From the NCBI GenBank assembly GCA_033442325.1, contig JAWQFM010000014.1, positions 835,792 to 899,791 of the forward strand: a stretch of 64,000 bases of DNA. The letters run 5' to 3'. A program made the translations under genes and the position numbers. The notes below the pieces were generated by a model, which was not told the DNA's origin, made no database searches, and saw nothing but the letters and a program-made list of their open reading frames with translations. This DNA is from Salpingoeca rosetta (lineage: Eukaryota; Protista; Choanoflagellata). This document shows, piece by piece, positions 23,581 through 52,461 of the stretch; position 1 is the first letter of the stretch, and every line of letters begins with the position of its first letter.

Positions 23581-24354
23581 TCACATGTCTGCACTGGTGA
23601 CCTCCAGTGAGGCGTTGGCCAGCACGAGCGACACTTCATCCTCCGGGTTGCACGCCACGTGCGCTGCCGCAACCACCAGCCGATGCCGCCCGCTTTCGCA
23701 CAGGATCGGGATGGCAAGCGTGTGTGCCGGCTGCTGGTTTCCGGAGCTGTCGCGCAGCATCACGGGCTGTGCATCCCACACCATCTCAGGCCCGCCGTCG
23801 CTCGTGAACGACTGCGCAGACGCCGACGGCCCCAAGCTGGCCCCATCACCACCACCACCACTCGATACATCACCACCTGGCACAGCTGCGGTGTGATCGC
23901 TCCTGGTGCTGGTGCCTTCGTCCTCGTCATCTTCATCTTCATCAATGACGATAACAGTTGGATGCGCGGGCTTTGCTGGGTCCTCCACGCACCGCACGAG
24001 CAGCCGGACCGGTGTTCCGGGCTCTTCGCTGCCCTCCGCCGCCTGCAGCACCTGGTCAGCTCCAACCACACCTGCAGCATCAAGCTCAAGACCTGTAAAC
24101 GTAAACGCACAGGGCGAAGGGGGTGTTGTGTTTGAGAGAAGCAGCAGCAATGACAAGAGAACAGTGAGTTGGTGGGCAGGCACACGACAAAGGCCAAATA
24201 CAACGTTGAAGCGCGCACAGAGAGAGAGAGAGAGNNNNNNNNNNNNNNNNNNNNNNNNNNNNNNNNNNNNNNNNNNNNNNNNNNNNNNNNNNNNNNNNNN
24301 NNNNNNNNNNNNNNNNNNNNNNNNNNNNNNNNNNAGAGAGAGAGAGAGAGAGAC

Positions 24355-24401
<47 letters not shown>

Positions 24402-27400
24402 CCACACACACCAAAAAAAAAAACACACTCACACACACACAAGCAAGCAACACGCACCATGGAGAGGGAATTGGGCGAGCACTTTGCCGGGGCAGGAGAC
24501 GTGTTCGCTGACAATCTGCGTGAGGAATGCGCCCGTGTCAATGGCGAGCGCGGCAAACATCGCCTGTGGGAAGGCTGTCATGCGCACATCCAACTGTACG
24601 GTCGGGAGTCGAGACACAAGGAAAACGAACATGGGCCATCATTGGGGATGAGCGAGTGGGGTCGACAGCAGCATGCTCGTCAACAGCGCGACAATCTCAC
24701 ACAAACATGCAAGCGGCGTCGAAGAAATCAACAACCAACTCAGCTAAACGTATTCACACACATTCACACACTCACACATTCACATTCACACACGCACATT
24801 CACACACGCACACACACACACACACATTCACACACACAAGCTAACCATGGGCGTTGGCGTTTTCTGCTCAAGGCACTTGACCATCTGCCACAGGCGATTG
24901 CACGCCGCCTGCACATACACGCGCAGAGGCACTTCCTCGCGATAGGCCTGCACATCCCAGATGGGCGGCACCCGGTCTCGGCTCGCACACAGGACGGTCA
25001 CCGCCAGAGTCGACTGGAATTGGGGAAGAGACAGGCAAGGGGGGGGGGGTTTCGACGTTGGCGTGAGAGGATTGCAACATGGCAATATGGACAAGTGGAA
25101 TGCTCGAGGCGAGCAACATCAAGTGAACAAAGTGATTGATATCACACACACGAACGCGTACAATACACCACAAAACAACACCACGCAACACAAACCACCG
25201 CACGACACAGCACAACCGATTGCAAAAGCTGACGGTGCGTGTGTCATTACCTGGGGGAAGGTTGGTGACGCCACAATCTGGCGAATCACAGCAGCGTCCT
25301 CGGCCATGCGCTGCAGCTGATCATAGATGGTGACAGCGGCGTTGTGTGCCAAGGCAAACACGCACGGGTAGGTCGACTTGAGTCTGGACGCCGCCAGCTG
25401 CTTCAGGCGATCACGCGGCAGCTTCTCCTGCATGCTCTCCACGTGGCGTTGGCAGAATGCCAGCACCTCCAAGCACTGGTCCTTTGTCGCAGCCTCCACC
25501 ACCTTGGTGCCAAGCGCGCTGCCCATCTCCAGACGCTGCACAGCGAGGGCAAGCGACTCCATGCGCGTCGCCTCTGACGACCGCGAGCGCCACATGCTGC
25601 CGAGCGTTCGGTCCTGCAGCAGCATCTCCGCCTCGTGTGGCAGGCCGTGGTCCAGCGACGCCGCAGCCTTCCACCAGCTGGCGAGCGCACTGCCGTCATT
25701 CCCGAGCGAAAAGCTCTCGTCGAGCACAGACAAGCTCTTGAGCGTCGACAGGATGTCACCGCCAAGGAACACACCCATCATTGTCTCAAGCAGACGCTGG
25801 TCCCAGTCGCTCGCAACCGCCCTGTAATGGTCGTCGTGGTGTGGTGATGGCGGCGGCGTACAGTTCATTCGCAGGGGAGATGAGGAGGGGAGCAAAAGAC
25901 ACATGAGCACACGCACACAAAAGCACACACACACACACATGCACGCAAAAGGGCGGGCGCACACACATGCACAAGAACAGGCAAAGACAGGCAAGTGCGC
26001 AGCACGACGTACAGCGAGTAATCAGCCAGTGCAATCTGCATGAGCTGCTGCTGGAGGTCTTGTGACGTCTTCAGCGCAGCCGCTGACGGCGATCGGATAA
26101 ACTCAAGCAAACGCGTCGTTGCACACACGAGATCCGTGTCGCTCAGCGGCGATGGCAGGAACCATCCTGCAACCACGCGGTAATTGAAGAACAGCCATGT
26201 GCGACGAAGCAATTGTCAGTTTCAGAGCCAAACGCACGCACATACATACACAAACAGACAATCGAACAGAGGCACACACACACACACACACACACACAAA
26301 CGAACAGAAGCACACACACACACACACAAGCGCAGGCACGCACAAAGAGCAGGTACCTTGGTGGGTTTCACGGCTGACAAAGGCGGCGTGACAAAGGGCA
26401 ACGGTGAACAGGACAAGGCGGGTGGTTGCGTCCTGTGCAGTCTCAATCACATCCCTGAACGAAAACGTGATGCGTTGGAAGTGCTCCAGAATCGTCGTTT
26501 CCCGCGTGAGCGAAATTGTCACGCACGAGCGAACCAGAGCAACAGGCAGCCTGGCGTCCTTGTCGCACAGCAGAACCAGCCGCGACGGGAACGTGGGTGA
26601 GCTTCCTCCAATGGTGGTGCTGCTGCTGAAGCCGCCACCACCACCACTGACACCACTGACACCACCGCCAATCACACCGACATCGCTGTTGTTGCTCTGC
26701 AGTGCAAATGCCACCAGCAGCGGGAACAGCGAGGGCTGCAGCTCAATGCGTTCGCACACAATCCAGGAGCGCGCGGTCATGGCCTTGTCCAGCACCGACC
26801 GCACATACTCCTCAGAGAGACAGCCAAAGCACAGGCGTATCACGCCCACACCACCACCACCACCGCCATTGGTAGCAGCACCACTCGCTCCGGTACTCGC
26901 TGGTGATTCGCCATTTGCGAGCTCATACAGGGCAGACACCACCTGTTCCTCGGGTTGGGTGGCCGAGTCCAGCAACAGCAGCACGGGGCTGGTGGGTGTC
27001 GGCTGCAGCTCGTCAATGTCGCACAGCTGTCGGTGCGTGGGTCGCCACGTGTGCGTGACGGCATCTGTCACCTTCCTGCGGTTCACCAGCGGCGTGGGCA
27101 ACCCAATGCCAAGTGCCTGCTGCGGCAGGTGTGTCAGCACGTACGAGTGCAGCTGCTCCAAGAACAGGTCGGGACGTAGGGCCCCCAGCACCAACAACCT
27201 GTAGAATTCAAGCACGTCAGCGTTGTGGCGGTCCATGTCGTAGGCGAACGTTGTTGGCATGTCCTTGTATGTCGCCCGCACGCGTCCGCACCATTCTTGC
27301 CATTCGCTCGAGTGGCACACCTGCCCATGCATGTGTGAGAGTGTGAGAATGTGTGTGTGTACATGTGTGGGAATATGTACATATATAAATGTGTGTGTGT

Positions 27401-29409
27401 GTGTCGGCGTGTCTGCGTGCGATGGGTGTTGCTTGTGGTGTGCGCAAAACTTCAGCTGCACTCCACGCAGCAAACATTGCCAAAGGCAACTTACCCTCCA
27501 GCCAACCACACCCACAACCACACCCACAACCACACCCACATCAAAGCGTACCATGGAGCAGATATCGCGGAGGTTGTGCATTGACGTTGCGAGGGAATCC
27601 ACCTTCTGCAGCTCTTCCCACTGATCGGCACCAAGATCACGCATGTTGAATGTGAGTGGGTTGATGCCACAGCACAAGCAAGGCCAGCGAGCAGAGCAAA
27701 CATACAAACAATGCGCCCGGCTGCCCACAACAATACACACATACTCTGTGCTCATCTCATCTCCTCCACATTCTCCAAATCCTCCTCCAACATACACACG
27801 CAATCGCCCACTGACCTGCTGCGGCATGATCCACTCCACAGGTTTGGGCACGTCCTCGAGGGACACGCGAGGGCTGCGGCGAGTGGGCATACGGCCCTGG
27901 AGCTCCAGCGGCACAAACTCAAGCAGCAGCTCCGTAATGTGTGCCAGCTCTGCCTGACACGGCAAAAACACCGTCGAGGGACGGCGCTCGCGTCGCATGG
28001 GTCTGAACGACTCGCGACGGGAGTGGCGCCCGACGGAACGGTCACGGAGTGGCTCAAGCGTGTCTTGAAACGTCCCGCTTGCACGGCCCCTCTTGTCGGT
28101 CTCATCCACATCCTCTTCAGTAAACTCAATCGTGTGTTGCTGCTGCTGCTGTCGCTGCTGCTGCTGTGTGTCCTTGCGCTTTTCTTGCTGTTGTTGCTGG
28201 TGCTGGTAAAAGTCCTCCTCCATGTCAAAGTCCTGCTGATCAGTGAGCATGGGCACAACGAGGTGTACGTAGAAAAGCACATCAAACGCAGTGCAGTGCT
28301 CGTCCAACAGCGCGTCCCGGATGTGGCGAGCAGCAGCCAGTAGCGCAGCGGCAACAGGAAGCTCGCCCTCCTTTAGGTCCGAGACCATCTCTGCGATAGC
28401 GCTCTCTGGCCGTCGCGCAGATGTGGACGTGGACGCAGAGGAGGAAGACGTCTTTGCAGATGCAGTGGACGGGTTCTCGGGTATTCCCACTGCCGCTGCT
28501 GACGACGAGGATGGCCGTGCTGACGCTTGCTCCATGGCCTCCTCCAGACCCCGCATGAACAGCCGCACCACCATGCCGGCGGTGAAGCCGTAGTTTGGCG
28601 ACACGCGGTTCAACGCGAGAGCCAGCTGCACCAGGCGGCAGCAGTAGCTGCTGACGAGGTCGCACCTGTCCTTCGACTCCTCCAGCTCCTGCATCACTTC
28701 GTGCGTTTCGTTCAGCTGCCGGTCCATGTCCTGCTTCGCGTGCACGACCTCAGCAATACCGAGCGCGTCTGGCAGTCCGTTGGAGACGCGCAGGGCGTCC
28801 ACCACCTTCTGCCGCGCCACAACAATGCCTTCCTCGAGGCGGCTGGCTTGACGGATGAGCTCGTTGAACTGCGTGTTGTTCTCCGGCCAGTACAGCTGGT
28901 ACAGCATGGTGCCCACAAACTGCTGCATGGAGCCCAGGCTGATGTCTGCGTACGACACAAGCGACAGGTACGTCTGGCCGTGCCCCAGCCACGAGTCAAG
29001 GTTCAGCTGTGGCCCACAGATGTACACACGCGTGGGCAGCATATCGGGGACAACGTGGCCCGTCACGTCGTAGCGCAGCGTCATGCCGTGCGAGCTCGTC
29101 TCAGTCACACTCGAGGTGGACATGCCAGACTGCAGGTCGTTGAAGACAGAGTGCCGACCCGCGGTAGGACGGCCCTGTTCATCATCTCCTGTCGCTGCTG
29201 CACCCGCGTCCTGCTGTTGCCCGCCTTCCTGCTGTTGCTGTTGCGGTGGCAAGCCGTCTGCTTGTGCTACTGCTGTGGATCTGTCCTCAGCGCCAGACAC
29301 GAGGCTGGCAGCAGACGCACTGTCGCCGGCTGTTGCTTGCTGGCCAGTGTTGTCACCCTCCTGCTCGCTGGTTTCGTTTCCATCAGCGCCACCGTCCTGG
29401 TCACCATCA

Positions 29410-29451
<42 letters not shown>

Positions 29452-32400
29452 GTCGTTGTTGCGGACGCTGCCTGCTGCTGAGGCTGGGGCTGCTCGGGCG
29501 TATGTGCTGACGGCGCTTGCGATGTCATGCGCTGCCAGATGGACAGCAGGTAGTGGTGCAGGTTGTCATCCAGGTAAGCGGGCGCGTTCAACAACAGCAC
29601 CGGCAGCTGCGACGCGAATGCGTCCTCAAGCTCCATCTGCAGCTTCATCCAGTCCACCGTACCAAACTTCATGTCCACAATCGCCAGCTCGTCCTGGCTC
29701 GGCACGTGGTGGTGGTCCGCCATACTGGTCATGGAGGGGCGCGCGGTGCCCACACGGGACAGCCCCGCTGGTGACGGCGAGCCCCGTCCGGCAAACGAGT
29801 CTGTCGACAGCCGGTGCATGCCGGCGAAGAGCGATGCCGTGCTCTGCTGCTTGCTGCGGCGCTGCAACCGCGGTGACCCCTGGCTGCCCACGTCATCTTG
29901 CTGCTGCTGCACTTCGTGCGGGTTCGCGGTCGTGGATGCGTGGCTCTCTGGCGGGCCTGATCGGCATGACGCAATCTGGCCCGTCTCAATGCGAACAATG
30001 TGCTCAACACCAAACCCGTGGGGGTCAAGCACGAGGTTCCATGACTTGGGCCATGCGAGCACAGAGCGGTTGATGAAGAAGAACTCGTCGTCGCCGTGCT
30101 GCGCCCCTTGGATCACGGCCGGTTTGCCACACAGCTGCGGCAGAATCGTGTCCAGGTCAAGAATCTGCGTTTCGTCTTCCGCCTCCGGCACGGAGCGAGC
30201 CGATGCTGCCCGCAGAAGGGACTGTTCAAACCCTTGCGTGGACACGCGTCGCATCACGCTCGCGCGGCCGTGCACCTTCACCTCCGAGGCAATGCGCAGG
30301 CCCTTGTCCAGCATGCTCTCCACCCACAGCGAGATGATCTGCACGCGGCTGTCATGTGAGAGCGCAGGCAGGTATGTGCGGATGGCTGCGCTCATCAGCG
30401 CGTTTGCCTCAACATACAGCGCTTCCTCCTGCAACTCGGACAGGCTCTCGTGCCACGACGCCTGCTCATCACGTAGCGTCTCCAGGAACGCCTGGGCCTG
30501 CTGCAGCTCCTCGGCAATGTCGGCCAGCGCCTTGCGGTGGTCGTTCTTCACGCGCGTCGACGTGTCAAACGATTTCTGCAGCGCTGCCACGCGGTTTGCA
30601 ATGGCAGAGCAAGAGCGCTGCATGTCTTCAAGCCCGGCCTGCCGCCTGTCAATCTCCGCCACAAAGCCGTTGTACTCGTGCTCGAGTGGGCGCGCCACCT
30701 CGTTCAGGTGGTCGTGCAGCGACACGGCGTCCGCCAGCCATTGCAGCAGAATCTTGTACGCCTCCGGCTCCTCTTCCTCGTCCTGCTCACGGAACATGCT
30801 CATGCGCCGTGCAAGCGGTGACATGCTGCTGCGGCGGCGCAGACGACGCGCGTGTGCTGCATCCACATCGCTCGGGGACAGGTGCTGTGGTGATGATGAG
30901 CGGGGAGCAGGGGACGTGCTGCGCCCGCTGCGTTCATCATCCTCGCCACCGTCGTTGTCGTCAGCACCGATGCTGTCAGTGTCGCCAGCCTCGGTGTCGC
31001 CTTTGCTGTTCTTCTTCCCCTGTGTTTGACGTCTGGCTTTGCTCTTGCGCTTGCTGGTCTTGCTGCTGGCTTCGCTGGTCGTCTCCTCTTCGTCTGACGC
31101 GGCGTCGTCATCCCCTTTGTCATCTTTCGTTGCTGCGTCCTCATCACCATCATCTCCGCCATCATTGCCGTCGTCGGCACCGTCCGCGTTGGCACCGTCA
31201 CCACCATCCCCCTCCTCGCCCTTGGCACCGCCATCACCATCGCCATCGTCTTCATCGCCATCGTCATCGTCGTCGTCATCCCCCGCCGCAGCAAACGGCG
31301 TTGCAACAGGGAGGTCGATGTCCGACGACTCAAACAGCACCTTGATTTCAGACAGGGCTTGCGGTGAGATCTCGGCGCTGTGTGCGTCCTGCAGGCTCTG
31401 GCGCAGGCGGTTCACGTCACTGCACAGGCGGCGACCAGCCATGCGCCAGCTCAGGTCAAGCTCAGCCACGTCCTCGGGGCTGTAGTTGTTGAGGAGAATG
31501 AGGATGCACGCAAACACGAGCTCAATGTTGTCCGAGACCCGGGCCATCATCTGCAGCACGCGGATGTTGCTGTCGTTCAGCTTGCCCACGTGCCGGCGAA
31601 GCAGCTTCAACTGCGTGTGGAGAACAAGTGGTGGTCGTGCATGGATGGGGTGGAGATGGGGGAGTGACGATGGGATGAGACTCAGAGGAAAGGGACATCA
31701 GATTGGAAAACCTATCTCCGAATTGAGGAGGTGGGTCGCTTAGCGTCACCAGCAGGGATCACCCAACCAAGCAAGCAATTCAGCAAGCTGCTTCGTGTGC
31801 ATGCGAGTAACAGAGAGAGTGTGTGTGTGTTTGTGTTTGTGTTTGTGTGTGTGTGTGTGTTTGTGTGTGTTTGTGTTGTGTGTTTGTGTGTGTGTGTGTG
31901 TGTATTTGCTGTCTCGTGGATCACTGACCTTTTTGGTGGTGATGCTCATGGCGGCATCATACTTCTCCTTGAACGTGGGCAGTTGCTGCTTGAGTTCGTT
32001 GAGATCGTGCTCTTGCGTCGCTTGCTTCGCCTGCGAGCGCTTGAGCGCAGCCAGGTCCCGCCCAATCTGCGTCAGCAGCCTGGTTCGTATGCATCAACGC
32101 ACAGCAATGAGTGGTAATTGCAAGGAACAACCCATTGGAGGGCTTCAAAGGCTGCGTGCTTGAACAGTTGTTTGCATGTTTGCTCGAATGCACGTGCTTG
32201 CATGTGTGTTTCGTTTGCGTGATGTGAGTGGGTGTCGTGTGCTGTCTGTGTGCTTTGCTTGCGATGAGAGCGGCAATTTGGAACCGACCTTGTGGTGATA
32301 GCGTCCTTCTCGTTCCACACGCTCAGCAAATCGTCGTGCTGTCAACGTGAAAGAGAGAGCAACATCATGACGCGTAAGGACGTGAAGGAGCAAGGCATGG

Positions 32401-35400
32401 ACCTGCAGTAATCATGCATGTGCAAGCGCAGGTGACCAAGGCATTTGGCCGTGCACACAAACACAAACACAAACACACACTCTCAATCACAGAGACACAA
32501 ACACAAACACAAACACGCGCACTCAATCACACAGGCACAACACACACACTCAATCACAGAGACACAAACACACACACACTATCTCAATCACACAGACACA
32601 AACGATTTAACAAATACACACCTTCGATTTGAGCTCTTGCACATGTTCTTGAGCGTCGCGTGTGTGAGAAAGGCCTTGCTCACGGCTCACAGCTTCCTCG
32701 CTGCAGGAACGAAAGGCAGATGCAACCACAACGACAATGTAAGTAAAGGTGCCATTGCATCGTAGTGCAATATATCAGCAACAGTACACGTGTCCACATG
32801 CACACATCAAAACAGAGCACACGCGCACGCACAATAGCACACACAATAGAACCCACGCATGCACACAATAGCACACACATGCACCACGACGTGCGTTTGC
32901 GCACCTGATGTACTGCCATTGCAGTTTCAGCATGGCTGCTGCTTCGTTGACAAACGTGTCAAAGTGCGACGTTGTGACGTGCGCCAAGGCAAGCTGGTCG
33001 TTGAGGTGGGAGCATGTGTAGTCCGCGACAATCTTGTGCATGGTCATCATGAGCGGTGTCAGCCGCGTCACAACGGCCTCATCGTACAGCCCTTGCAGCT
33101 GACGTGAACATATGCGCGCATGGTGTAGGGAAGCACAGGATGTGAGATTGAGAGCGGCTGAGGGCGAGAGAGGGTGTGTAGGGGATAGCTGAAGACAATG
33201 ATGATGCGCACTCGCTTCGGCCGCAAGACACACAACTCATGTTCTACAACACACATGTATACGCACACGCACACGTGTATACACATGCACATTCATATGC
33301 AAACACGCACACGCACACATGAACACACGCATGCACATTCATATGCAAACGCGCGCGCGCACATCCACATACACACGCACACGCACACGCACACGCACCT
33401 ACACATACACATACACACACACCTTGTGGAAGGACGCCTGGAGAGACGACGCAGCCAGGTCGGAGAGGTCGTCTGGCACAGGCTGTGGTTGCGCAAACAC
33501 AAGCAAGTTGCTCACCAAACTGCGAGATTGAGCAAGCAAAGGGATACGCAATCAAAAAAGTGATTGGGATGAGAAACACACATCAAGGAATATGGCAAGC
33601 GGCAGAGAAAAGCGCCCTGACCCAACACTGGAAGGTGAGACAGAACGCACATGACGTGTACACACGTGCACACACACACACATACACACAAACACACACA
33701 CCACAATGGGCACACAAGAGCACGTGCTCACCTCGGGTTGAATGCAATCAGTCTGAGCTGGTGATAGACGGAAGAAGGCCCGCGCTCCGGCACATAGAAG
33801 ACCAGGCGAAGGTTTTGCCTGCAAGGGAGATTCAACACTCAGGAAACGTGAGGCCCGACACATGCTTGCGAGCGACAAGAACACAGGTGTCTCATGCTGC
33901 GTGTGTACACTGGTACACTGAGGGTTTTGGCACAACCTGACATCATGACCGCACCTACAAAACACACACAGTCACACACACACTCGCATTCACACACGCA
34001 GACAGACAGATACCCGCGCAAGTACACAGTCGTGGCATCACGTCTCCTTTCCTCTCTCTCTCCCTCTGCCAATGCACTTCATTGTAACAGCGAGCGACGC
34101 ACCTGATGGTGCGCTTGAAGAACGCCCACGAGTTCTTGAGCGATGGCTGCAAGCCGGCTTGGATCACCTTTGGTTGGCTCAGCGTGCTCACGGCGACGAG
34201 GTTGTCTGGCGAGAGCAGGTCACCAATCTCCCCGGATGTCACAAAGCTGGCAAGCATGGACAGCACGGGCGCGGGGCACTCTGCCAGGCTGACGGCAAAG
34301 ACAATCTTCTCATCGCGGGTGCCTGCACGCATGACAAGGTCCACAAACTGCGACCGCACACGCCTGTGCTCGGAGAGGTCCTGCGCAAACATGACCTCAA
34401 ACCCGGCCAGTGTGCCGCACAGCTGCACAATCTCCTTCACGCGAGGCATGCGCAGGAGAAAGTTGGTGCGATACTTTGCCTGTCGCATGTGCTCCACCAC
34501 CTCTGCAATGGTCACCACAAAGGTGCCGGGCAGCTTCATCTGCAGCGTCGACATGTGCCCTTCGCTGTCCATAAAGTAGCTGGACAGCGTGTTCTTGAGC
34601 GACTTGTACAGCGCACGCGCGCCAACGCTGGCTGGACGCACCTTGCCAACGCCGCCACCGCCGCCACCACCCGTACCACCCACGTAAGCATGCTGGTCGC
34701 CATCAAGCACCCTGGGTCCACTGCCACGGCCACTACCACTGCCAGCGCTGGTCGCGCTGCTGGCGCTGCCGCCTTTGCCCTTGTTGAGCACAGCATGCAC
34801 GAGCTCACGCGGGCACAGCATGACGCTCTCGTCGTGCTCGTGGTCAACGGGGATGTCGTGTGTGAGAAACGCGTCGTGCTTGCACAGCCACACGGGCAGG
34901 GCTGGCTCGCTCGGCAGCAAGTCGCGGAAGAAGCGCTTGCGCACAACATTCTGCAGTAGCGTGCGGAACCTGCAGAGGGAAGGGAGGGAGGGACAAGAAG
35001 AAAAGATGGGGGGATGGTGTGTGCGGCGAGAATATGAGTGTGAGCGTGAGTGAGTATGTGAGCGTGAGTGAGTATGTGTGCGGTGAGTGCGTGAGTGTGT
35101 GAGTGAGTGTGTGAGTGTGTGAGTGAGTGAGTGTGAGTGAGCTTGAGCGGGAATGTGTGAGTGTGAGTGTGTATGAGTTGGGGGGGGGGGGCAGAATGTG
35201 CACGGCAACAGCGGCGCATGACAACGAGCACCTAACACACAAGGGTGTGAATGCGCACCGTGTAATGTCGTTCTGGGACACCATGCGTCGGGAGTAGACG
35301 GTGGCCAGCACGGTGGACCAAACGAACACAACGAGCTCGAGAGACGCAAACGGCTCAAGGCGATTGGCAAACTCAACCAGCGAATGCTTCAAATCCCGCT

Positions 35401-38400: not shown

Positions 38401-41400
38401 GTAAACGGCAAGCCCCACGTGCAGGAGAGCGGGTGGGGTAGCTGGTTTGGAAGCGGGCGCGGGGCGATGGACGCCATGATGGTGGCGAAGCGGTGCAGGC
38501 TGGTGGCAAGCTTGGATGCCTCGTGGAACCCGTGGGCCGAGAGCATGGCCTCCGCGACAAATGCGCTGTGTGGGAGGGACGCGGAGATGGTGCGGAACGT
38601 CTGGCGGACGCCGACCGGCAGGGGCTCGTGGTGCACGCTGGCGTGGCTAAGAACACACACGGGCTGTGTGGACACGCGCACGGGCGGGCCGCGGCCAATG
38701 CGCACGACATCGCTTGCCTCCGATCGCACGGCCTGCATGATGGACCGGACTGTGTCGGCCAGTGAGGCCAGCACGCTCTCCGGCAGGCACGACACGTTTT
38801 CCAGCACGAGCACGGAGTCCATCGTGGCCATGCCTTTGAGCGCCTGGGCCAGCAGCTGGAAGCTCGTGAGCTGCGTGCAGCACACGGTGTGCAGCGGGCG
38901 CCCAAGCAGGTACGCCAGCGAGCGCATGGTGTGTGCAGGGCTGCTGCGCGTCTCCGCCGTGACAATGGCGCCAAGCCCGAGGCTCGATGCGCGCATAACG
39001 CCAAACCAGTAGCGTTCCGACAGGTCTGTCAAGCACATGGCCTGGCTTGGCTCCACAACCTCGAAGCTGTATGGGGCGACGGTGGTGCCGAGCTGAACGA
39101 GGAGGTCGCCTTCCTCGTTGCAGTGGCAGCGCACGACGCTCGACGCCTCCCACGTCAGCGGCAGCGAGTCATCCACAGCGGTGCTCGGCGTGTTGGCCGA
39201 AAACTGAGGGGTGAGTGGTGCGGATGCAAGGCTGCTTGGGTTGTCGCTCAGGCGCGAGGCCACGTCGCGGAGGTAAATCAGAAAGGCAATGATGGTGGTC
39301 ATCTTCTGCCGGTCCGCGGTGCTGTGTGCACTTGCCAGTGTGCTCTGCATCTCGTTCACCTGCAGCACGCGCGCGTCGTGCAGCTCCTTGAGCAGACGAG
39401 GCACCTGCGCGGCCTCCTTCGTGTTCGCCTTGGCAACGAGCGCGTCAATCTCCTGCGTGTTCTTCACGAGCAGCGCCATCGCCACGCACTGTGCCAGGCG
39501 GTCCATCGTCCAGTTCATCGAGTATGCAGAGGCGGCGCGCTTGCGGGGGAGGTGTGCACCGATGCTGCCGTGGCTGCCGCGGCCGACGTGTGGCGGTGAC
39601 CGGCGCTCGCCGCTGGTTAAGTTGCGGGGCGAGGTTGCTCCACCACGGTCTCCTCTGCCCTCGTCGCCATCATCATCATCGTCGCCGACACCACCTTCCT
39701 TGTCGTCACCATCATTGCCCCTCTCCTCGTCATCAGCATCAGCATGGGCCCCTTCCAGCTGTTGCTGGATCAGGTTCACCGGCTCGCCAGGGATGGTAAA
39801 GGGCGACAGAATGCCTGCAAGCAACGAAAGCCGATGAAAGGAGAAGGGGGAGTGTTAGATCTCACCCAAACTCACACACACACACACGCACACGCACACA
39901 TGCACACACACACTCACACATACACACCTTCCATTTGGTCGTCACGCAAGAGAGTCATGATTTGGTTGCGCACAAACTCCTTGATCTTGCTTGTAAGCGT
40001 GTCCAGGAACACCACGGCTGGGCCCTTGAAGATGAACGACACATCAAACTCGACCTTCTCGCCCGTCGCAGCAGTCACGCCAGTCACAATGTTCCTGTCA
40101 TGTGTGTGGGTGTGTGTGAGAAGCGTGTATGTGGTGTGTGTGTATGGTGTGTGTGTGTATGGTGTGTGTGTGTATGGTGTGTGTGTATGGTGTGTGTGTG
40201 TGTGTGTGAAAGAGACGGATTGGCACGACGTGAGTTAAGGTTAACTGCACGATGACTCGAAACAATTGCGGAGGTAGCAACCAACACTGCCAGCGAAAGC
40301 ACCATCGAAAGCACCACCACTACGCCCTGACTGCTCAGACTCACGTTTGGTTCCGGTCCTCAATCTCAATGGCAGAGATGCCGGGGAAGACGAGATTGAG
40401 GGCGCGGGAAATAAGGCCTGGGTGGCCGCAGTACGTCTGCACAGCAAGCACGTCTGGCGGCGACAGAAAGTAGAGGCGTGGCAGCATGTCGCAGTGGTTG
40501 TAGAAGAACCGTTGCAGCGCCCCTTTGATGTGCGAAAAGTTCTGCGTGTGTGCGTGTGCGTGTATGCGTGTGTGTTTGTGAAATGTGTTGAGTGTGTGTG
40601 TGTGTGTGAAATGTGTGTAAGTGTGAGCGTGAGTGTGTGTGTGTGTGTGTGAAATGTGTGTAAGTGTGAGCGTGTGTGTGTAAACACTGCTGTGTGAATA
40701 TGCGGCTGAATGTGCGGTTGAATGTGTGATTGCGCCGAAAACGCATGCATGCACGTTCAGAGATATCCTCATCCCATGCACACCTCGCAAACGTCTGCCT
40801 GTCACCTGTTGGATGTTGTTGAGGAGATTGAGGACACCTGGGCGGAGACACAGACCGACCACTGCTGGGTCGCGCTGGATGGACGCCAGCAGCGAGCGAA
40901 ACTCGTTGTCTGTCGATTGGAACATCTGCAGCAGCAAAAACCGAGACACAACGAAGGAAGAGAAATGAAGATGCGATGGTCAATGAGAGGAGTGAGTGAT
41001 AAGGGTGTGTGCGATGTCCATAACGAAGAAAGAACAGTGGCAACAGCAGGCTGAGGTGAGCCGCGGTGGTTCACCACGATAGGCAATGTGTGCAGGTGGG
41101 ATCATACCTGGATTTCACGCTGCAGCTCGCGATCAAACGCCGTCTTCTTCTCGTTTGGATGAAGGCCATGGCGAAGGCTGCCCAGGCTGGCTTGCGTCAT
41201 GCGCATGGAATGCTTCATACCGGACAGGCGGCCCTCTGCTTGCTGCTGGTCGTGCATGAAGGTGACAAATGCCTCGGATGTTGTGATCCACAGCTCTTGC
41301 ACGCGGCGCAGCGTCGTGAGCACCTCGTCGATGGTCTTCAGGCGCGCCTGCGCACACCACAAAACCAAAAGGGTAAAAGGCAGAGGAACAATGAATGGGG

Positions 41401-44400
41401 TGAGGGGCAACGGGTGGCAGCAGCGTCGCCATGCTCCGCTTTGCACACAATGATGATGGCTGGCCAGCAGCAGCAATTGTCAAAATGGATCAACCAAGCA
41501 TCACCTTCCTCACATGAACAAAGCTCGACTGAGCCTGATTAACGGGAGAGAACACACGTCCATAAACCCCACGTACACCCATGCACACACGCACACGTAC
41601 CTCAGTGGAAGCGATTTCGCTGGCCATCACGCGGGAGCCATAGCCCTTTTCCGTATGCAGGAACTCAATCGTGCTGCGGTTGTTGGCCAGCATGCCAAAC
41701 AGGTCATCCAGCCCAGACACAAGCATCGCAGCTGCAGGTGTATGAAGGCACATGCATGCGTGAGTGTGAGTGGAACTGCTAATGTTATCTCCACAGGTGT
41801 CACACAAGACAGTCAGAACCAAGGCCGTCGTCAATATTCACCACTTGTACCACACACACACATACATACAGAGAGAGATAGATAGAGAGAGACACACACA
41901 CACACACGCACACGCACAACGCACGCACACACGCACAAAAGAAGGCCCGCAAGGGTGTACCTGTGAGCTCGTTTGAGCGCGGGCCCTTCTCGCTCATGAC
42001 AGAGCCTCTGCTCGAGATGCCGCTTGCCCGCCGGTCGCGCGAATCCGTGCGCAGTCGCGAATTGCGCCCGTAGCGCCTACAAATAGTGGTGCAGTGACGC
42101 AGTGGGTGTTGGGTGACAATTAGGCGGTGAATATGGTTGCGTGTGCATGCGTGTGCATGTGCTGTTGCGCTAAGCAGCGGCTTGAATTGGGTTGTGATGC
42201 ATTGTGCTGTGGAGGCAGGCCGTAGCCATAGTGCAGGGATGTGCTGACTGTGCATGTGCGAACGTACTGTGAGACAGTGGTTCTGCCTGTCCGAAGGGAG
42301 GATGTGACGCGCTCATTGATGCCAAGGCCCGGGTACCAAGGCTTGAGGGTAAACACAGCCGTCATCCACTTTTCCTCATACAGTCGCAATGCGTTCTCGC
42401 TGCGAATGTCCTTCGCCGCCAGCGCAACCACAGACTATCAAGCGCACGTGATGTGCAGTGAACAAGGGGGCATTGTGAGAACATGTCACACAGGCGAAAC
42501 GTCGTCATTTGTGTGTGTGTGTGTGTCTGTGTGTGTGTGTGTGTTATGCACTAGTAGATGTGCACGTGCGTGGTTTTGCTTCTTTGTCAACAAGTAATAG
42601 TTTGTCCTGTCACAAAGAGCTCCTTGCCACAAGCATGCCGTGACCAACGAGCCGAGAGAACATCATCAACACAGCATAATGTAACCAGGTACAAACAAAC
42701 CTCAACAAGGGATGGCTGGTCCTTTGGCAGCCAGTACAGCATCTCTCGCAGCGTCCAATTGCTGACTGTGCTCTCATCCAGCGTCTCAGTCACGCCTGTG
42801 AAGGTAACACGGGAACAACATCACAGCACCAAATGGTACCACGCACATGCACGCACACGCACACGTTAACACAGACACAAAGCATCCGTCAGTAAAACTA
42901 CATGCAAGCAAGCAAGATCGTCGTCTGCAACACGTTACTGAAGCCATCAAGCACGCATCATCACACAATGGGTGCCCTCGCTCTGAGTGCATGCACGCAC
43001 CAGCATCGCGGAAGAGTTTCTTCCAGTGGCTGGACCGGAGATCCTCTTTCTTCAGGTTTTCCAGCAGCGGCACACTCCTGATGAGCAACGCAACCGCGTT
43101 CGTGAGTGACGCAAACCACAGTCTTCTCCCCCTTCAGCGAAAGCTCGACATGCACAGCACAGCACAACACAGCATAACACAAACACACGACACAACCACA
43201 ACATGATATCTTCTTCTTCTTCTTCTTCTTCTTCTTCTTCTTCTTCTTCTTCTTCTTCTTCTTCTTCTTCTTCTTCTTCTTCTTCTTCTTCTTCTTCTTC
43301 TTCTTCTTCTTCTTCTTCTTCTTCTTCTTCTTCTTCTTCTTCACAGGAGCACACTCAATAAAAGCAAGCTTACTTGATAATGGCGTCTGTTGACCGCTGC
43401 AAGCCCTGCGTGACGTCCCATTCAAAGCAATCCTCCGGCAGGGCGTGGATCAACTCCAGCATGGACTCCGCCTTGGCCAGCGCCGTGTCGAGGTCCGCCT
43501 CTGTCCACCTGGCGGACAGCACACCACCAAGCTGCTCGTTGAAGTGCAGGCGGAGCGACGTGACCTCGTCCACGTGCGCCAGCGTCTGCTTGGCCGTGGT
43601 GAGCAGCCCAAAGTCGACAATGGACATGTTGGTGAGCTGTTGCAGCTGGCTCAGGTCGCGCGACTGCCGCTCCAGCTCGCCAAAGATGCGCGTCTGGTCG
43701 GCAATCAGCAGCCGGGACATGTCTGGTGGCGTCCCGCTCACAAACGCGTCGCTCGACAGCAGCGCATCAAAGGCGTCGCGCAGGCGCATGTCAAACTCCA
43801 CCAGCTGCTGCTTGATGCGCTCCGCCTCTTTTGAAATTCGCGGCGCCAGTCCGCGCTTGAGGTCCTCCAGCTTCTTGCGCATCACCTGCATGCGTTCGGG
43901 AAACGCGGCATACGCCTCCCGCTCCTCCACGGGTACTTGAAGGTCGTACTTTTCAAGCAGCGACAGCGTGCGCTGCAGGGGACCGAGCTTGCCGTCCGTC
44001 TCCTCCTGCCGCAGCGACACGTCGTGGAAGAAGTTCATGAGTTTCATGAACGAGAAGTGGGAGCCGGAGGACTTGAGCTCCACAATGCCGTCCTCTGTCC
44101 AGTCCAGGTAGTTTTTCAGCTTCTCGATGGTTCCCTCCGCACAGTCCAGGATAAATGTGCCAAAGGTGTAGAGCCACTTGGAAGCGAGTGCACGCAGCGT
44201 GGCGTTGATTGGCACCATATCCAGCTGCAGCCAACCGAGCTGGCGCGTGTCGGGCATGGCCCGCAGCCGCTGCTGGGCCGCTTTGAACACGTGCAAACAG
44301 GACGAAAACTCCTCCAGCGTCGGCACGTCGTCAACGTCCCTGTCGCTCAGCGTCGCCAGGTCGTGCATGCGCCCAAACCGGTTGGTCATGGTGAACTTAC

Positions 44401-46922
44401 GGGAGGCACGGTCAAAGCGCAGCGCCTGGCCCGTCACGTTCTTGCTCAGCACGCTGAGCTGCGCGTTGCTTGCAAGCATCCGCCTGTCCTGCAGGAACAG
44501 GTTGAAGAGGGCTGAGGGGTCCTCGTGGAACAGCAGTTGAAAGCTGTCGAGCACGTGCAGCTGTTCCTGGCAGTGGTTGGCAGACTCGGTTACGGCTTCG
44601 TGTATCGCATCCACCATCGCCCGCACGTTGTCCTGACGCGCAAGATCAAACACCTCGCTTGTTCGCGGAGACTTTACACACGTGGCCAGCTGCACACGTT
44701 AAAAAATCAAAATCACACCAAGAGGGGGACAGAATTAACACGGTTCACACGTGAGCGAGAGAGCGAGCGAGCGTGTGAGCGTGTGTTCAAAGAGCCGGGG
44801 GAGAAGTTTGGCACGGCCGGCAGAAGTAAAACGTCCATGCAACGCTGGCAATGGGGGGTTCAAGAACGCAACGGATGTGCATGGATTCACGATGCGCATG
44901 TGTACGAGCACACACGCGTGCAGACACGCACAAACGCACAAAAACACACACACACATGCACAAAAACACACACACGTACAAGCAAGCAAGCCCGTGTGTA
45001 CGCAGAAATCTACGCTCATCAAGGCAGCGGCCAAGTTCACACCTGAAGGACGTCGGTGACGGTGCGATCGACAATCTCAACGAGCGTGTTCTCTGCAGCG
45101 TGCTGGGCTTGGACCAGCGGTGGCTTCTGCACAACAGTGCCATTGGTCACGCTCACCTGTGTTGAAGGAAGGTGAGGGAGTGGGGGAAGGATGGGTTGTG
45201 TAAAGATCCGCGAATGACAGTTGCAGTTGCAGCAGCGAGTTGAGTTGAGTGCGATGGAAGTTTCAATCCTGCTGTGATCATCGTTTGCAGGTTCGGAAGT
45301 GACGCGTGACCCACAAACACACACAAGCGCACGAAAATCAAACACACACACACACACCTCGATGCCGATGACGGCCTTGACATTCGATTGTGGATCGTGA
45401 AGGCACTGGTACAGCTTGTGCAGCGCGGTTGACACCAGGTGATACACGCCTACATTGGACACGTGGGCATGCGAATGTTCAATCGGGAACGATGTGTCAA
45501 TTACGGCATGCAGATGAAATACGACACCACAGAGCAAGCAAGCGTGATGTGCTGCACGTTTGATCGCGACCCGCAACACCACAGACCTGATGCAATTTTG
45601 TCGTCAAGATGTGCGATGAAGGCTTCCCACGCCGGCGATGACTCTGTGACGTACGACGCAGTCAGGCACGACTGCACAAGCTCTTCGAGGCGATTTGAGT
45701 CGTGCACGAGCATCGATCGCACGCGCTTCATGCAGTCCAAATGATACTCCTGTTTGGATCAGACGAACAACACCACGTGAGAGCACGTGAGAGTACGTGC
45801 GCGCGTGGGCGAACTCCAAACACAACAGCACGCACAATGACAAAGACAGGGACACACGCACGCGCGCACACATGTGCACACACAGGCACACACATGCACA
45901 CGCACACATACACACACGCACACCTCGAAGGATTCTGCGGTGAACGGGCGCTGCTCGAGCGCGTCATCTGCAAATGCACTTTGTGGTGTTGTGATGGACT
46001 TCCACCGCTCCACAATCGCATCCATCTCCTTGCGGGCGCCAGCAACCTGCGCAGGGGGGTAGCAGCAGCAGCAGCAACAACAAAACAATCGGTGAAGATG
46101 GTGGTGGTGGTGGTATTTGAGTGGTGGAGCAAGTCATGGGAGCGGGTGTATCTGGTAAGTTCAGTGTCATGGGCAATGTTGAAAAACACAACCGAGTTGA
46201 ACAAAGGCTCGTTCCACGCACAGTGTCGAGGCGAGTTTGAAAGCCTTTGATGAGCAAATCCTCCAACGTGGCCAGATAGTCCTACAGCAACGCAACAAGA
46301 CGAAGAGGAACAAGCAATGCACGCAACACGTGCATTGGAGAGGGAAGATGCTGGTCAATGGTACGTTCGTGGGTCGCATCAACCAACACGTCAGTCAAGA
46401 GTACCAGCGCACAAACACATACACAAGCAAACAAACAAACACGCACAGAAACAAACAAACAAACAAACAAACAAACAAACAAACAAGTAGCTCGGTCTTG
46501 GATGGCTGCGTGCTCACGTGCAAGCTGGAGCTGCTGAAGTTGAAGTCGACGGTTCCCTTCGTGAGCGCCTCCACCAAGTTCGGGAACATGTCGTGGTACA
46601 GCGGTCGTTCAAACTGAACACAAACCACACGATGAGGGGACAAGGCGGGGGCGGGGGGATGGGTGAGGTGAGAAACATAATGACACTGAATCGTTTACAC
46701 GTGTGCAAGTGAACATACATAATGTGTGCGTGACAGTTGCAATCACACGGCAACGCTTCATCGCGCAGCGCACCTTGTCGAGTTTGACGCGGAGGTGGTT
46801 GTACATGCCCAGAACCATGTCCAGCTTGGCCACGACCACATGCAGCGACGGCTGCCGCTCGCACAGCATCTCCATCGTCTCCCCAATCTTGTACTACACG
46901 CAAGGTGACAGGGGGAGAAGGG

Positions 46923-46956
<34 letters not shown>

Positions 46957-48508: not shown

Positions 48509-48545
<37 letters not shown>

Positions 48546-50340: not shown

Positions 50341-50413
<73 letters not shown>

Positions 50414-51480: not shown

Positions 51481-51513
<33 letters not shown>

Positions 51514-52461
51514 CAAACACACATACACACACAGTACTGACTTGAGAAGGCGGCTGTTCTCGTCGAGGGCCGTCTTGACCTCTTGCAAGAGGTTTGAAAA
51601 GGACGTGACATAGTTGGAGGCTGCCGCGTCCAGCTCGTCCACGATGGCCTGCACCTCCATGCTGTGCAGCTGCGCGTGCACAGACTCCAGGTGTCGCTGG
51701 CGCAGCTCAAATGCCTGCAGCTCGACGTGCGGGCCCGGGTGCTTCACCTGCCGCACCACCTCGTTGATGTTGAGCTTGAGCAGGCCCTTGATGACTTTGC
51801 TCCAGGCAATGAGGGCTGACTCGAGCTGGTGGATGTGCTCCTTCATGAGGCCGTTGCTGGTGCTGGTGGCGGCGCTCTTGGCGACCGCGCTGTATGTGGA
51901 CAGGCGCCCGGTGCGCATGCGCTCGCTCAGGTCGCCCTCTGCGCCAGCCGCCACGGCCAGCAAGGGCAGCGGCAGCATCACCTTGCCCTGCATGTGGCCC
52001 TCGGTCATCTGCATGGTGGAGAGCAGCTTGAGGTGGGCCTCGTGCACGCGCTTCGCGTCGTTGAAGGGGAGGTGCGGCACGGGCGGGTTGTCCACGGCGG
52101 CGGACAGCAGCGGCAGGTAGACGTCGCGGGAGACCAGCCACAGGTGGTACCACGGGGTGGCCACCAGCTCGCACACGACCAGCTGCTTGGCGATGTCTGC
52201 TTCGGTGATGCTGCTGACGCCGAATGTTTTGCGGAAGACGAGCAGCTTTTGGTCTGCCGGCACCTTCATCGGCACGAGCGAGAGCTGCGGCTCGTGTGTG
52301 TCTGGATCGGCGGCTGCAAACAGCGTCCTGTAGTCCATGCGCTCGAAGAACTGGAAGATCTCCCGCAGCATCTGCGCATCGATGGAGGACAGGCTGCCCT
52401 TGCACTCCAGGGATGAGTGCAGCCGCTTGTCAATCCATGTCAGTCGGTCGTCCGTCGCCAT
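23581..52461 (-). CDS. Highly divergent axonemal-type dynein heavy chain (outer-arm beta/DNAH9-11-17-like tail) with degenerate AAA1
   Basis: Colinear dynein architecture over dozens of exons. N-terminal tail: [10 protein letters not shown]...RDVYLPLLS...GKVMLPLP...[19 protein letters not shown]...PGPHVEL (51540-52461). Linker: [35 protein letters not shown]1 region: [25 protein letters not shown]2: [11 protein letters not shown]3: GQPAAGKS. Then stalk/MTBD, AAA5 ([11 protein letters not shown]), AAA6 ([10 protein letters not shown]...[10 protein letters not shown]...[14 protein letters not shown]) and a C-terminus ending ...[15 protein letters not shown] at 23581. Confidence 0.9.
24235..24334. 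other. Assembly gap (100 N) within an (AG)n microsatellite in the last dynein intron
   Basis: Run of 100 N flanked by AG repeats; the true length is unknown. Confidence 0.99.
43209..43343. repeat. Intronic (TTC)n/(GAA)n trinucleotide repeat
   Basis: About 135 nt pure repeat in a dynein intron. Confidence 0.97.
47190..47385. repeat. Compound minisatellite: three units of ATGGTCGCAATGGG followed by (GGT)n and (GAT)n
   Basis: The anchor sequence recurs at about 47191, 47273 and 47336, inside a dynein intron. Confidence 0.9.

What the first reader, a model, noticed from the sequence alone, without database searches (positions are those of the whole stretch)
23581..52461. Full-length dynein heavy chain with a destroyed AAA1 ATPase site: a candidate pseudo-motor dynein
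Seen: at the AAA1 position (about 38790-39000, minus strand) the protein reads [65 protein letters not shown]. Established: motile dyneins have a near-invariant GAPAGPAGTGKTET Walker A and WGCFDEFNR Walker B here, and AAA1 is the site that drives motility. Both motifs are lost although the flanking sequence aligns without gaps. P-loops survive in AAA2 (GSPNCGKS, about 38007-38030) and AAA3 (GQPAAGKS, about 36507-36530, with Walker B-like LVCVVDD). The AAA4 P-loop is gone ([18 protein letters not shown], about 34430-34470). Reading frames stay open across multi-kb exons and every domain through the C-terminus is retained, which argues against a pseudogene. Inference: a non-motile structural or regulatory heavy chain with an outer-arm-beta-like tail, acting as a brake, spacer, assembly scaffold or nucleotide sensor. 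It may parallel, or be orthologous to, degenerate animal chains such as DNHD1.
Basis: partly seen in the sequence, partly recalled or inferred. Interest (0 to 1): 0.82.

Follow-up and report, generated by a model that had tools for sequence, protein, structure and literature searches.

The report
Motor-dead outer-arm-type dynein heavy chain
This choanoflagellate gene encodes a full-length dynein heavy chain whose main ATP-burning site is destroyed but which is still under selection. Its closest relatives are a little-studied animal dynein class rather than DNHD1 or DNAHX, so this kind of non-motor dynein seems to predate animals.

Summary
A roughly 29 kb minus-strand gene (ATG 52461, TGA 23583-23581) is collinear from end to end with a 5,863-aa Salpingoeca infusionum transcript protein. 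AAA1 Walker A, Walker B and sensor I are replaced. The AAA2 and AAA3 P-loops survive and the AAA4 P-loop is gone. No hidden exon with intact motifs exists in the locus. The assembly gap lies inside a GT-AG intron and costs no coding sequence.

It is not a pseudogene. All homology-supported segments are open, and dN/dS against a marine-metagenome orthologue is 0.08-0.28. The AAA1 fold is predicted confidently.

The DNHD1 suggestion is not supported. Trees place the gene, with three choanoflagellate or environmental relatives, as sister to an animal family. That family consists of long, outer-arm-beta-like heavy chains that have also lost AAA1 Walker B and the AAA4 P-loop. It is most likely Kollmar's class-13, which was reported as metazoan-specific. 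AU tests reject the two alternatives I tested: a DNAHX grouping, and animal class-13 grouping with outer-arm beta without the choanoflagellate clade.

The most likely role is a non-motile partner chain in a two-headed, outer-arm-like complex. That role is inferred, not shown. This is a new member of a known kind and of moderate interest. Other notes of this scan report further dead dynein genes elsewhere in the same genome.

The parts
23581..52461 (-). Whole gene: ATG at 52461-52459 (in-frame TGA just upstream at 52467-52465), TGA stop at 23583-23581. At least 33 homology-supported coding segments; estimated product about 5,400-5,900 aa.
   Evidence: Collinear tblastn with P0002 residues 1-5861; start and stop read directly.
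51568..52461 (-). N-terminal tail (DHC_N1), outer-arm-beta-like dimerisation region.
   Evidence: Pfam DHC_N1 E 1.2e-13. Best PDB hits are Chlamydomonas, Tetrahymena and human outer-arm beta chains, residues about 77-305.
43376..44695 (-). Neck/linker exon, the best-conserved part of the protein (47% identical to P0002).
   Evidence: best PDB hits DNAH17 and DNAH9. The Xenopus class-13-like chain scores E 5e-38 here, against 3e-12 for a canonical beta chain.
35550..39824 (-). Single 4.3 kb open reading frame holding the linker end, AAA1, AAA2 and AAA3.
   Evidence: ORF list and translation; Pfam AAA_6 E 3.6e-23 and AAA_7 E 2.6e-12.
38937..38960 (-). Former AAA1 Walker A: TAETRSSP in place of GPAGTGKT.
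38790..38813 (-). Former AAA1 Walker B: VLVLENVS in place of WGCFDEFN.
38625..38648 (-). Former AAA1 sensor I: SHASVHHE in place of NPGYAGR.
38007..38030 (-). AAA2 P-loop GSPNCGKS, intact.
36735..37130 (-). In-frame low-complexity insert (poly-His, acidic, Arg/Ala-rich) between AAA2 and AAA3.
   Evidence: Translation; it lies between the homology segments 38138-37134 and 36731-35625.
36507..36530 (-). AAA3 P-loop GQPAAGKS, intact.
36300..36326 (-). AAA3 Walker B-like LVCVVDDID. The 'DD' form is also seen in the canonical axonemal chains of the alignment.
34102..34977 (-). AAA4 large subdomain. The P-loop is replaced at 34473-34420 ([18 protein letters not shown]).
26106..31697 (-). 5.6 kb stop-free stretch; coding matches to P0002 run from 31613 to 26355 and cover the distal stalk, microtubule-binding domain, CC2, AAA5 and part of AAA6, with several low-complexity inserts.
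30762..31292 (-). 177-aa acidic disordered insertion (net charge -32) between helices H5 and H6 of the microtubule-binding domain.
   Evidence: Alignment and composition. Shorter inserts sit at the same site in P0002 and P0004; there is none in P0006 or the animal relatives.
24093..24457 (-). Last intron (GT-AG). It contains the assembly gap 24235-24334, which is flanked by (AG)n and (CA)n repeats.
23584..24092 (-). Last coding exon. Its C-terminal motif EVSLVLANA is shared with P0002.

Best explanation
The gene encodes a real, selectively maintained dynein heavy chain of outer-arm-beta descent whose main motor site, AAA1, can no longer hydrolyse ATP and probably cannot bind it.

Shown here:
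- The gene is intact from the start codon to the C-terminus.
- AAA1 has lost Walker A, Walker B and sensor I, and AAA4 has lost its P-loop. AAA2 and AAA3 keep theirs.
- The linker-end and AAA1 fold is predicted with confidence.
- The sequence around the dead site is conserved in related organisms.
- The gene belongs to a clade with other choanoflagellate or environmental chains. That clade is sister to an animal family of long beta-like chains with the same AAA1 Walker B and AAA4 losses.

Inferred:
- That animal family is Kollmar's class-13.
- The hydrolysis-dead state arose before choanoflagellates and animals split.
- The protein uses its beta-type tail to pair with another heavy chain and with intermediate and light chains in a two-headed, outer-arm-like complex. 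There it would act as a non-motile partner (scaffold, conformational template or regulator), with AAA2 and AAA3 serving as structural or regulatory nucleotide sites.
- The large acidic insert in the microtubule-binding domain probably weakens microtubule binding.
For: Dynein identity and completeness: Pfam DHC_N1, AAA_6 and AAA_7; 61 solved dynein chains matched; collinearity with the 5,863-aa P0002.

Dead AAA1. There is no alternative Walker A or DEFNR-like coding potential anywhere in 23-53 kb on either strand.

Selection: dN/dS is 0.28 (NG86) and 0.08 (ML) over 647 codons against TARA scaffold L001. P0002 comes from a transcriptome and is a complete ORF.

Fold: pLDDT 84.8 and pTM 0.82. Foldseek TM is 0.7-0.8 to the AAA1 region of many solved dyneins, at 13-19% identity.

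Beta-type tail.

Clade with the animal family:
- IQ-TREE LG+C20 PMSF gives SH-aLRT 100 with a stem of 0.65-0.68.
- The same bipartition appears in 6 of 7 separately analysed blocks.
- The AU test rejects the animal family grouping with outer-arm beta without the choanoflagellate clade (delta lnL 102).
- In the linker, the Xenopus and Pleurodeles members beat canonical beta chains by more than 20 orders of magnitude in E-value.
- The AAA4 P-loop loss, the AAA1 Walker B loss and a one-residue insertion in the microtubule-binding domain ('W.KGAKR') are shared.

Class-13 identification: the vertebrate members carry low-complexity C-terminal extensions and a class-4-like tail, as Kollmar describes (PMC5100056).
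Against: - No RNA reads could be laid on this gene.
- Both sister clades are long-branched. The trees and AU tests share any long-branch pull of the model, and I named the tested groups after seeing the tree.
- I could not obtain Kollmar's class-12 and class-13 sequences or the sea urchin DNAHX accession. The labels 'class-13' and 'DNAHX' for my reference sets rest on described features only.
- The window protein and P0002 lack the C-terminal low-complexity extension listed for class-13.
- Kollmar reported class-12, not class-13, in choanoflagellates.
- The function, the partner chain and the location in the cell are untested.
Confidence: 0.7

Rival explanations
1. A lineage-specific, independently decayed paralogue of the choanoflagellate outer-arm beta chain. 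On this reading it only appears to be sister to the animal family because both are fast-evolving (long-branch attraction).
For: Both clades have long stems and end branches. The P-loop decay differs in detail between the clades. Kollmar found class-13 only in animals.
Against: Other long branches in the same trees (DNHD1, the DNAHX-like pair, P0010+P0094) do not join them. The grouping recurs in 6 of 7 blocks. A site-heterogeneous model keeps it at 100. The AU test rejects the alternative. The linker and tail, which evolve more slowly, also prefer the animal family.
Confidence: 0.12
2. It is the choanoflagellate orthologue of DNAHX (Kollmar class-12), the non-motile chain found in sea urchin sperm.
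For: Kollmar places class-12 in choanoflagellates. DNAHX is also long, has inserts, has a degenerate AAA1 and has an insertion in the microtubule-binding domain.
Against: The DNAHX-like pair (P0220, P0229) groups with outer-arm alpha/gamma-type chains, away from this gene. The AU test rejects a joint clade (delta lnL 127). The tail is beta-type, not DNAH5/8-type. Walker B is lost here but kept in DNAHX. The S. infusionum orthologue has no insert at the AAA4 small-domain site where P0220 has one.
Confidence: 0.05
3. It is an orthologue of animal DNHD1 (Kollmar class-11).
For: DNHD1 also has a degenerate AAA1 and disordered inserts.
Against: DNHD1 forms its own clade far from this gene. A scallop DNHD1 gives no tblastn hit on the window. 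Three of the four DNHD1 rows gave no match to the linker block, and the fourth only a weak partial one (score 33).
Confidence: 0.03
4. It is a pseudogene or decaying gene copy.
For: Catalytic motifs are lost at two AAA sites and there are many low-complexity inserts.
Against: About 4,000 homology-supported codons (a product of an estimated 5,400-5,900 aa) carry no frameshift or internal stop. dN/dS is 0.08-0.28. There are orthologues in at least three other organisms, one of them a complete transcript. The dead-site surroundings are conserved.
Confidence: 0.02
5. It is still a working motor that uses another site, such as AAA3, for hydrolysis.
For: AAA3 keeps its P-loop and an acidic Walker B, and AAA2 keeps its P-loop.
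Against: From established knowledge of dyneins, AAA1 hydrolysis drives the powerstroke. The AAA3 'DD' Walker B is the same as in the canonical axonemal chains of the alignment, where it accompanies an active AAA1. The acidic insert in the microtubule-binding domain argues against normal track binding.
Confidence: 0.05

Closest known systems
Kollmar class-13 dynein heavy chains (PMC5100056). Represented here, by inference, by P0111, P0167-P0177, P0179, P0181 and P0182 from gar, sturgeon, amphibians, molluscs and a hydrozoan.
   Same: Outer-arm-beta-type tail, great length (4,900-5,650 aa), loss of AAA1 Walker B and of the AAA4 P-loop, and a sister-group position in every tree.
   Different: The window protein has lost the AAA1 P-loop entirely; the animal members mostly keep a G..GK remnant. 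It lacks the low-complexity C-terminal extension. It carries a large acidic insert in the microtubule-binding domain. It comes from a choanoflagellate, whereas the class was reported as metazoan-specific.
DNAHX / dynein-X of sea urchin sperm (bioRxiv 10.1101/2025.01.18.633724); probably Kollmar class-12.
   Same: A long, insert-rich axonemal-type heavy chain with a non-catalytic AAA1 that is thought to be non-motile. It also has an insertion in the microtubule-binding domain.
   Different: DNAHX derives from the DNAH5/8-type chain, keeps Walker B and binds ATP at AAA1. It has a folded insert in the AAA4 small domain and inserts in the stalk coiled coil. This gene has a beta-type tail and groups elsewhere.
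DNHD1 (Kollmar class-11).
   Same: An 'orphan' heavy chain with a degenerate AAA1 and disordered inserts, needed for flagellum formation in mammals.
   Different: It forms a separate clade and has no detectable specific similarity to this gene. Three of the four DNHD1 rows did not match the linker block and the fourth matched it only weakly.
Canonical outer-arm beta heavy chains (DNAH9/11/17, Chlamydomonas ODA beta).
   Same: Closest canonical class for the tail, linker and motor. The overall domain order is the same.
   Different: The canonical chains have intact AAA1 GPAGTGKT and DEFNR motifs and an AAA4 P-loop. They are about 4,500 aa long and lack the large inserts.

Membership tests
Dynein heavy chain (general) | N-terminal tail, linker, AAA modules with stalk and microtubule-binding domain, and the C-terminal region, in canonical order. 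| tested here: met
   Pfam DHC_N1, AAA_6 and AAA_7; PDB hits; collinearity with a full-length relative and seven ordered homology blocks; AAA1 fold model.
Kollmar class-13 (animal long beta-like chains) | N-terminal tail similar to class-4 (outer-arm beta). | tested here: met
   The tail ORF hits outer-arm beta chains best, E 9e-18 to 2e-8; the best chain named as another class scores 5e-5.
Kollmar class-13 (animal long beta-like chains) | Groups phylogenetically with the class. | tested here: met
   It is sister to the animal set with support 100, in 6 of 7 blocks, and the AU test agrees. Caveat: the animal set is identified as class-13 by its described features, not by Kollmar's own sequences.
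Kollmar class-13 (animal long beta-like chains) | Unique low-complexity C-terminal extension. | tested here: not met
   Xenopus, sturgeon and axolotl members have it. The window protein, P0002 and the Hydractinia member end at the canonical C-terminus.
Kollmar class-13 (animal long beta-like chains) | Longer AAA5 domain. | tested here: inconclusive
   The AAA5/AAA6 region of the window holds several long low-complexity inserts, but I did not map domain borders.
DNAHX / class-12 | Descent from the DNAH5/8-type outer-arm chain. | tested here: not met
   Trees, AU test and the beta-type tail.
DNAHX / class-12 | Folded insert (PS2i) in the AAA4 small domain. | tested here: inconclusive
   It is absent at that site in the S. 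infusionum orthologue, while the DNAHX-like P0220 has about 40 extra residues there. The window's own small exons for this stretch (about 34100-31700) were not resolved.
DNAHX / class-12 | AAA1 keeps Walker B and binds ATP. | tested here: not met
   Walker B reads LENV and the P-loop is absent.
DNHD1 / class-11 | Groups with DNHD1 sequences. | tested here: not met
   It forms a separate clade and there is no tblastn hit.

The most novel reading that the evidence does not exclude
Class-13-type chains such as this one may be the unidentified second heavy chain of the 'dynein-X' complex. On this reading, a pair of AAA1-dead heavy chains, one alpha/gamma-type (class-12/DNAHX) and one beta-type (class-13), already existed in the common ancestor of choanoflagellates and animals as a non-motile, outer-arm-like complex. 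Kollmar predicted such a pair from the tails. Other notes of this scan report a second dead heavy chain in this genome.
Probability: 0.15. Interest if true: 0.75.

Novelty: new member of a known kind. Interest (0 to 1): 0.5.

Why it matters
Three published classes of aberrant heavy chain are relevant here: DNHD1, DNAHX and Kollmar's classes 11-13. Non-catalytic AAA1 sites have been described for DNHD1 and DNAHX. For the beta-like class, the nucleotide sites had not been analysed in any paper I could find, and that class was thought to be animal-specific.

This gene suggests three things. The beta-like class reaches back to the choanoflagellate-animal ancestor. Its whole membership lacks AAA1 Walker B and the AAA4 P-loop. 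It has nonetheless been kept under purifying selection since that split.

If the genome is Salpingoeca rosetta, as other notes of this scan say, the role of a non-motor dynein could be studied in a tractable single-celled organism rather than in animal sperm. That would also bear on the identity of the second chain in dynein-X.

Tried and rejected
- Read laying failed. The only hint of expression is that four runs guessed to be RNA hold 27-56% of the sampled words of a stretch that is about 61% exon.
- A word search with the AAA1-AAA2 part of P0002 found only P0002 itself.
- MAFFT alignments of 46 full-length chains timed out three times. I replaced them with HMM-guided block alignments.
- The AU test on the 46-row set did not finish. 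I redid it on 25 rows.
- I first labelled the gar/Xenopus family as DNAHX. The alignment of the AAA4 small domain and microtubule-binding region, and the AAA1 motifs, showed that the features published for DNAHX belong to P0220 and P0229 instead. I then relabelled the sets.
- No supplementary files of Kollmar's paper are held, so I could not check his class assignments for choanoflagellate genes.
- Pfam found nothing in the C-terminal ORFs. Homology there rests on P0002 alone.
Full report
**What is in the sequence**

The minus strand between 52461 and 23581 carries one large split gene. Two very long open frames dominate it: 39824-35547 (1,425 codons) and 31610-26103 (1,835 codons). Pfam finds DHC_N1 in the first ORF (51385-52461) and AAA_6 and AAA_7 in the 4.3 kb ORF. 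The scores are weak for a dynein (E 1e-13, 4e-23, 3e-12), so this is a very divergent heavy chain. The 4.3 kb ORF matches 61 solved dynein chains.

An exhaustive HMMER search of 1.84 billion representatives with the linker-end to AAA2 part gave only four hits below 1e-30. They are:
- P0001, 64% identical, a fragment on a TARA Oceans scaffold;
- P0002, 35% identical, a complete 5,863-aa ORF from the Salpingoeca infusionum transcriptome;
- P0003, a 656-aa fragment from ENA;
- P0004, a 4,986-aa environmental protein.

P0006, from an uncultured choanoflagellate (UC4), follows at E 4.5e-24. tblastn with P0002 is collinear with the window from residue 1 at the ATG (52461) to residue 5861 just before the TGA (23583-23581). 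The match falls into 33 ordered segments, and the only stop is at an HSP end that runs into an intron.

**Check of the observation**

In the alignment to the solved chain 9y6s_5c, 'TAETRSSP' stands opposite 'GPAGTGKT' and 'LVLENVSC' opposite 'GCFDEFNR', without gaps. In window coordinates these are 38960-38937 and 38813-38790. Sensor I 'NPGYAGR' is 'SHASVHH' at 38648-38625.

The AAA2 P-loop (GSPNCGKS, 38030-38007) and the AAA3 P-loop (GQPAAGKS, 36530-36507) are intact. The AAA3 Walker B reads LVCVVDDID, and the 'DD' form is also seen in the canonical axonemal chains of the alignment. The AAA4 P-loop is replaced by '...[13 protein letters not shown]' at 34473-34420.

A scan of all six frames of 23-53 kb finds only those two Walker A motifs and no DEFNR-like motif. 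The locus therefore holds no alternative exon that could restore AAA1.

**The assembly gap**

The gap at 24235-24334 is flanked by (AG)n and (CA)n repeats of the kind that fill the introns of this gene. It lies inside an intron with a GTGCGT donor (intron starts at 24457) and a CAG acceptor (intron ends at 24093). The flanking exons join in frame as '...FPLHG|[10 protein letters not shown]...'. This aligns to P0002 '...IPLSGLDLYAASVKNG...' with no residues missing. The gap does not touch the coding sequence.

**Not a pseudogene**

The TARA scaffold L001 encodes an uninterrupted orthologue of the AAA1-AAA2 part. Over 647 well-aligned codons, dN/dS is 0.28 by Nei-Gojobori and 0.08 by maximum likelihood, with synonymous sites near saturation.

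The surroundings of the dead site are well conserved between the two sequences ('[18 protein letters not shown]', '[26 protein letters not shown]', 'LLEN'). An AlphaFold2 model of the linker end plus AAA1 has mean pLDDT 84.8. It superposes on the same region of many solved dyneins with TM 0.7-0.8 at 13-19% identity. The fold is kept while the chemistry is lost.

**What family it belongs to**

One word search, seeded with a gar protein from the first hit list, returned labelled reference sets:
- DNHD1 sequences;
- canonical classes;
- a sea cucumber and frog pair (P0220, P0229);
- a family of 4,900-5,650-aa chains from gar, sturgeon, bichir, amphibians, molluscs, a flatworm and a hydrozoan, annotated as 'dynein beta chain-like' or 'DNAH9-like'.

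I first took this last family for DNAHX, which was wrong. The features published for DNAHX are a Thr-to-Val change in Walker A with Walker B retained, an insert in the AAA4 small domain, and inserts in the stalk and microtubule-binding domain. These are found in P0220 and P0229, not in the beta-like family.

The beta-like family instead fits Kollmar's class-13, which has a tail like class-4 (outer-arm beta) and low-complexity C-terminal extensions. I see those extensions in the Xenopus, sturgeon and axolotl members. Kollmar's class-12 (tail like class-3, abnormal stalk) fits DNAHX, and class-11 is DNHD1. These identifications are inferences from described features. I could not obtain the authors' sequences.

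**Trees**

Seven HMM-aligned blocks (linker, AAA1, AAA2, AAA3, AAA4, CC2/AAA5 and a further AAA5 block) gave 2,481 columns for 46 chains. Both FastTree and IQ-TREE under LG+C20+F+G4 (PMSF) give the same result. The window groups with P0002 (support 100), then with P0004 and P0006. This clade is sister to the animal beta-like family with support 100 and a stem of 0.65. The union sits next to the canonical outer-arm beta chains. DNHD1 and the DNAHX-like pair lie elsewhere.

The same bipartition appears in 6 of the 7 blocks analysed separately and in a reduced set of 25 rows. AU tests on that set reject two alternatives:
- a tree in which the animal family groups with outer-arm beta without the choanoflagellate clade (delta lnL 102);
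- a tree joining the choanoflagellate clade to the DNAHX-like pair (delta lnL 127).

Simpler comparisons agree with the trees:
- On the window's linker exon, Xenopus class-13-like scores E 5e-38, a canonical beta chain scores 3e-12, and scallop DNHD1 gives no hit.
- A word search with the P0002 linker finds a newt class-13-like chain at 1e-40, ahead of DNAH17 at 6e-17.
- The tail ORF hits outer-arm beta chains best among solved structures.

The clades also share derived characters. All eleven members lack the Walker B Asp-Glu of AAA1, and all lack the AAA4 P-loop lysine context. Most share a one-residue insertion in the microtubule-binding domain.

Caveats: both clades are long-branched, I named the tested groups after seeing the tree, and the test shares the model's biases.

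**How it most likely works**

Shown: AAA1 has no Walker A lysine/threonine, no Walker B acidic pair and no sensor I, so hydrolysis at the site that drives the powerstroke is excluded and nucleotide binding there is unlikely.

Inferred:
- AAA2 and AAA3 may still bind nucleotide.
- The beta-type N-terminal region, which matches residues about 77-305 of outer-arm beta chains, probably still pairs the chain with a second heavy chain and the intermediate- and light-chain block.
- The window's microtubule-binding domain carries a 177-aa insert with net charge -32 between H5 and H6 (31292-30762). P0002 and P0004 have shorter inserts at the same site, and P0006 and the animal members have none. Such an acidic, disordered insert probably weakens binding to the acidic microtubule surface.

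Taken together, I read the protein as a non-motile partner chain in a two-headed, outer-arm-like complex.

Kollmar proposed from the tails that class-12 and class-13 form such a heterodimer. Chai et al. found that DNAHX pairs with an unidentified second chain that has a normal stalk. Other notes of this scan report at least one more dead heavy chain elsewhere in this genome and name the organism as Salpingoeca rosetta. I tested none of this.

**Comparison with the literature, and novelty**

AAA1-degenerate dyneins are an established kind (DNHD1; DNAHX). Class-13 is a published class, although the paper says its ATP sites were not analysed and calls it metazoan-specific. A search of the held library found no later work on class-13.

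This finding therefore adds a pre-animal member and shows that the catalytic losses are shared across the class. It is not a new kind of protein.

**Limits**

- No RNA reads were laid.
- Exon borders were verified only for the last intron.
- The small exons between about 34100 and 31700, and three stretches of P0002 with no match in the window, remain unresolved.

Noticed in passing
window 43209-43342: A long (GAG)n tract, which would read as poly-Glu if translated, sits between the exons ending at 43376 and starting at 43085. P0002 aligns contiguously across it, so it is intronic. It blocked the first attempt to lay reads.
   Followed up: partly
window 23000-53000, for example 24340-24420, 33250-33750 and 48150-48550: Nearly every intron of this gene contains (CA)n/(TG)n or (AG)n microsatellites, which translate as CVCVCV or THTHTH. 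The assembly gap lies in one of them.
   Followed up: no
window 36735-37130: An in-frame insert between AAA2 and AAA3 has a run of about 20 histidines and acidic/Arg-rich low complexity. The S. infusionum orthologue has different sequence there.
   Followed up: no
window about 29100-29530: Gln-rich and acidic low-complexity inserts (a run of about 14 Gln) lie inside the AAA5 region of the 5.5 kb exon.
   Followed up: no
L001 (TARA Oceans scaffold, 2,943 bp): A marine metagenome scaffold encodes a 63-67% identical orthologue of the AAA1-AAA2 part, also without introns in that stretch. A fairly close marine relative of the window's organism therefore carries the same dead site.
   Followed up: partly
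P0220, P0229 and the P0111 family (reference proteins, not in the window): Frogs appear to have both a DNAHX-like chain (P0229) and a class-13-like chain (for example P0174). In my trees the DNAHX-like pair sits with alpha/gamma-type outer-arm chains and the class-13-like family sits with beta-type chains. This fits Kollmar's idea of a paired origin.
   Followed up: partly
hit list (P0010, P0036, P0094, P0142, P0143 and others): About a fifth of the 150 best library hits are other divergent heavy chains lacking the AAA1 Walker B Asp-Glu. They come from dinoflagellate transcriptomes and unnamed environmental contigs. AAA1-dead dyneins may have arisen many times.
   Followed up: no
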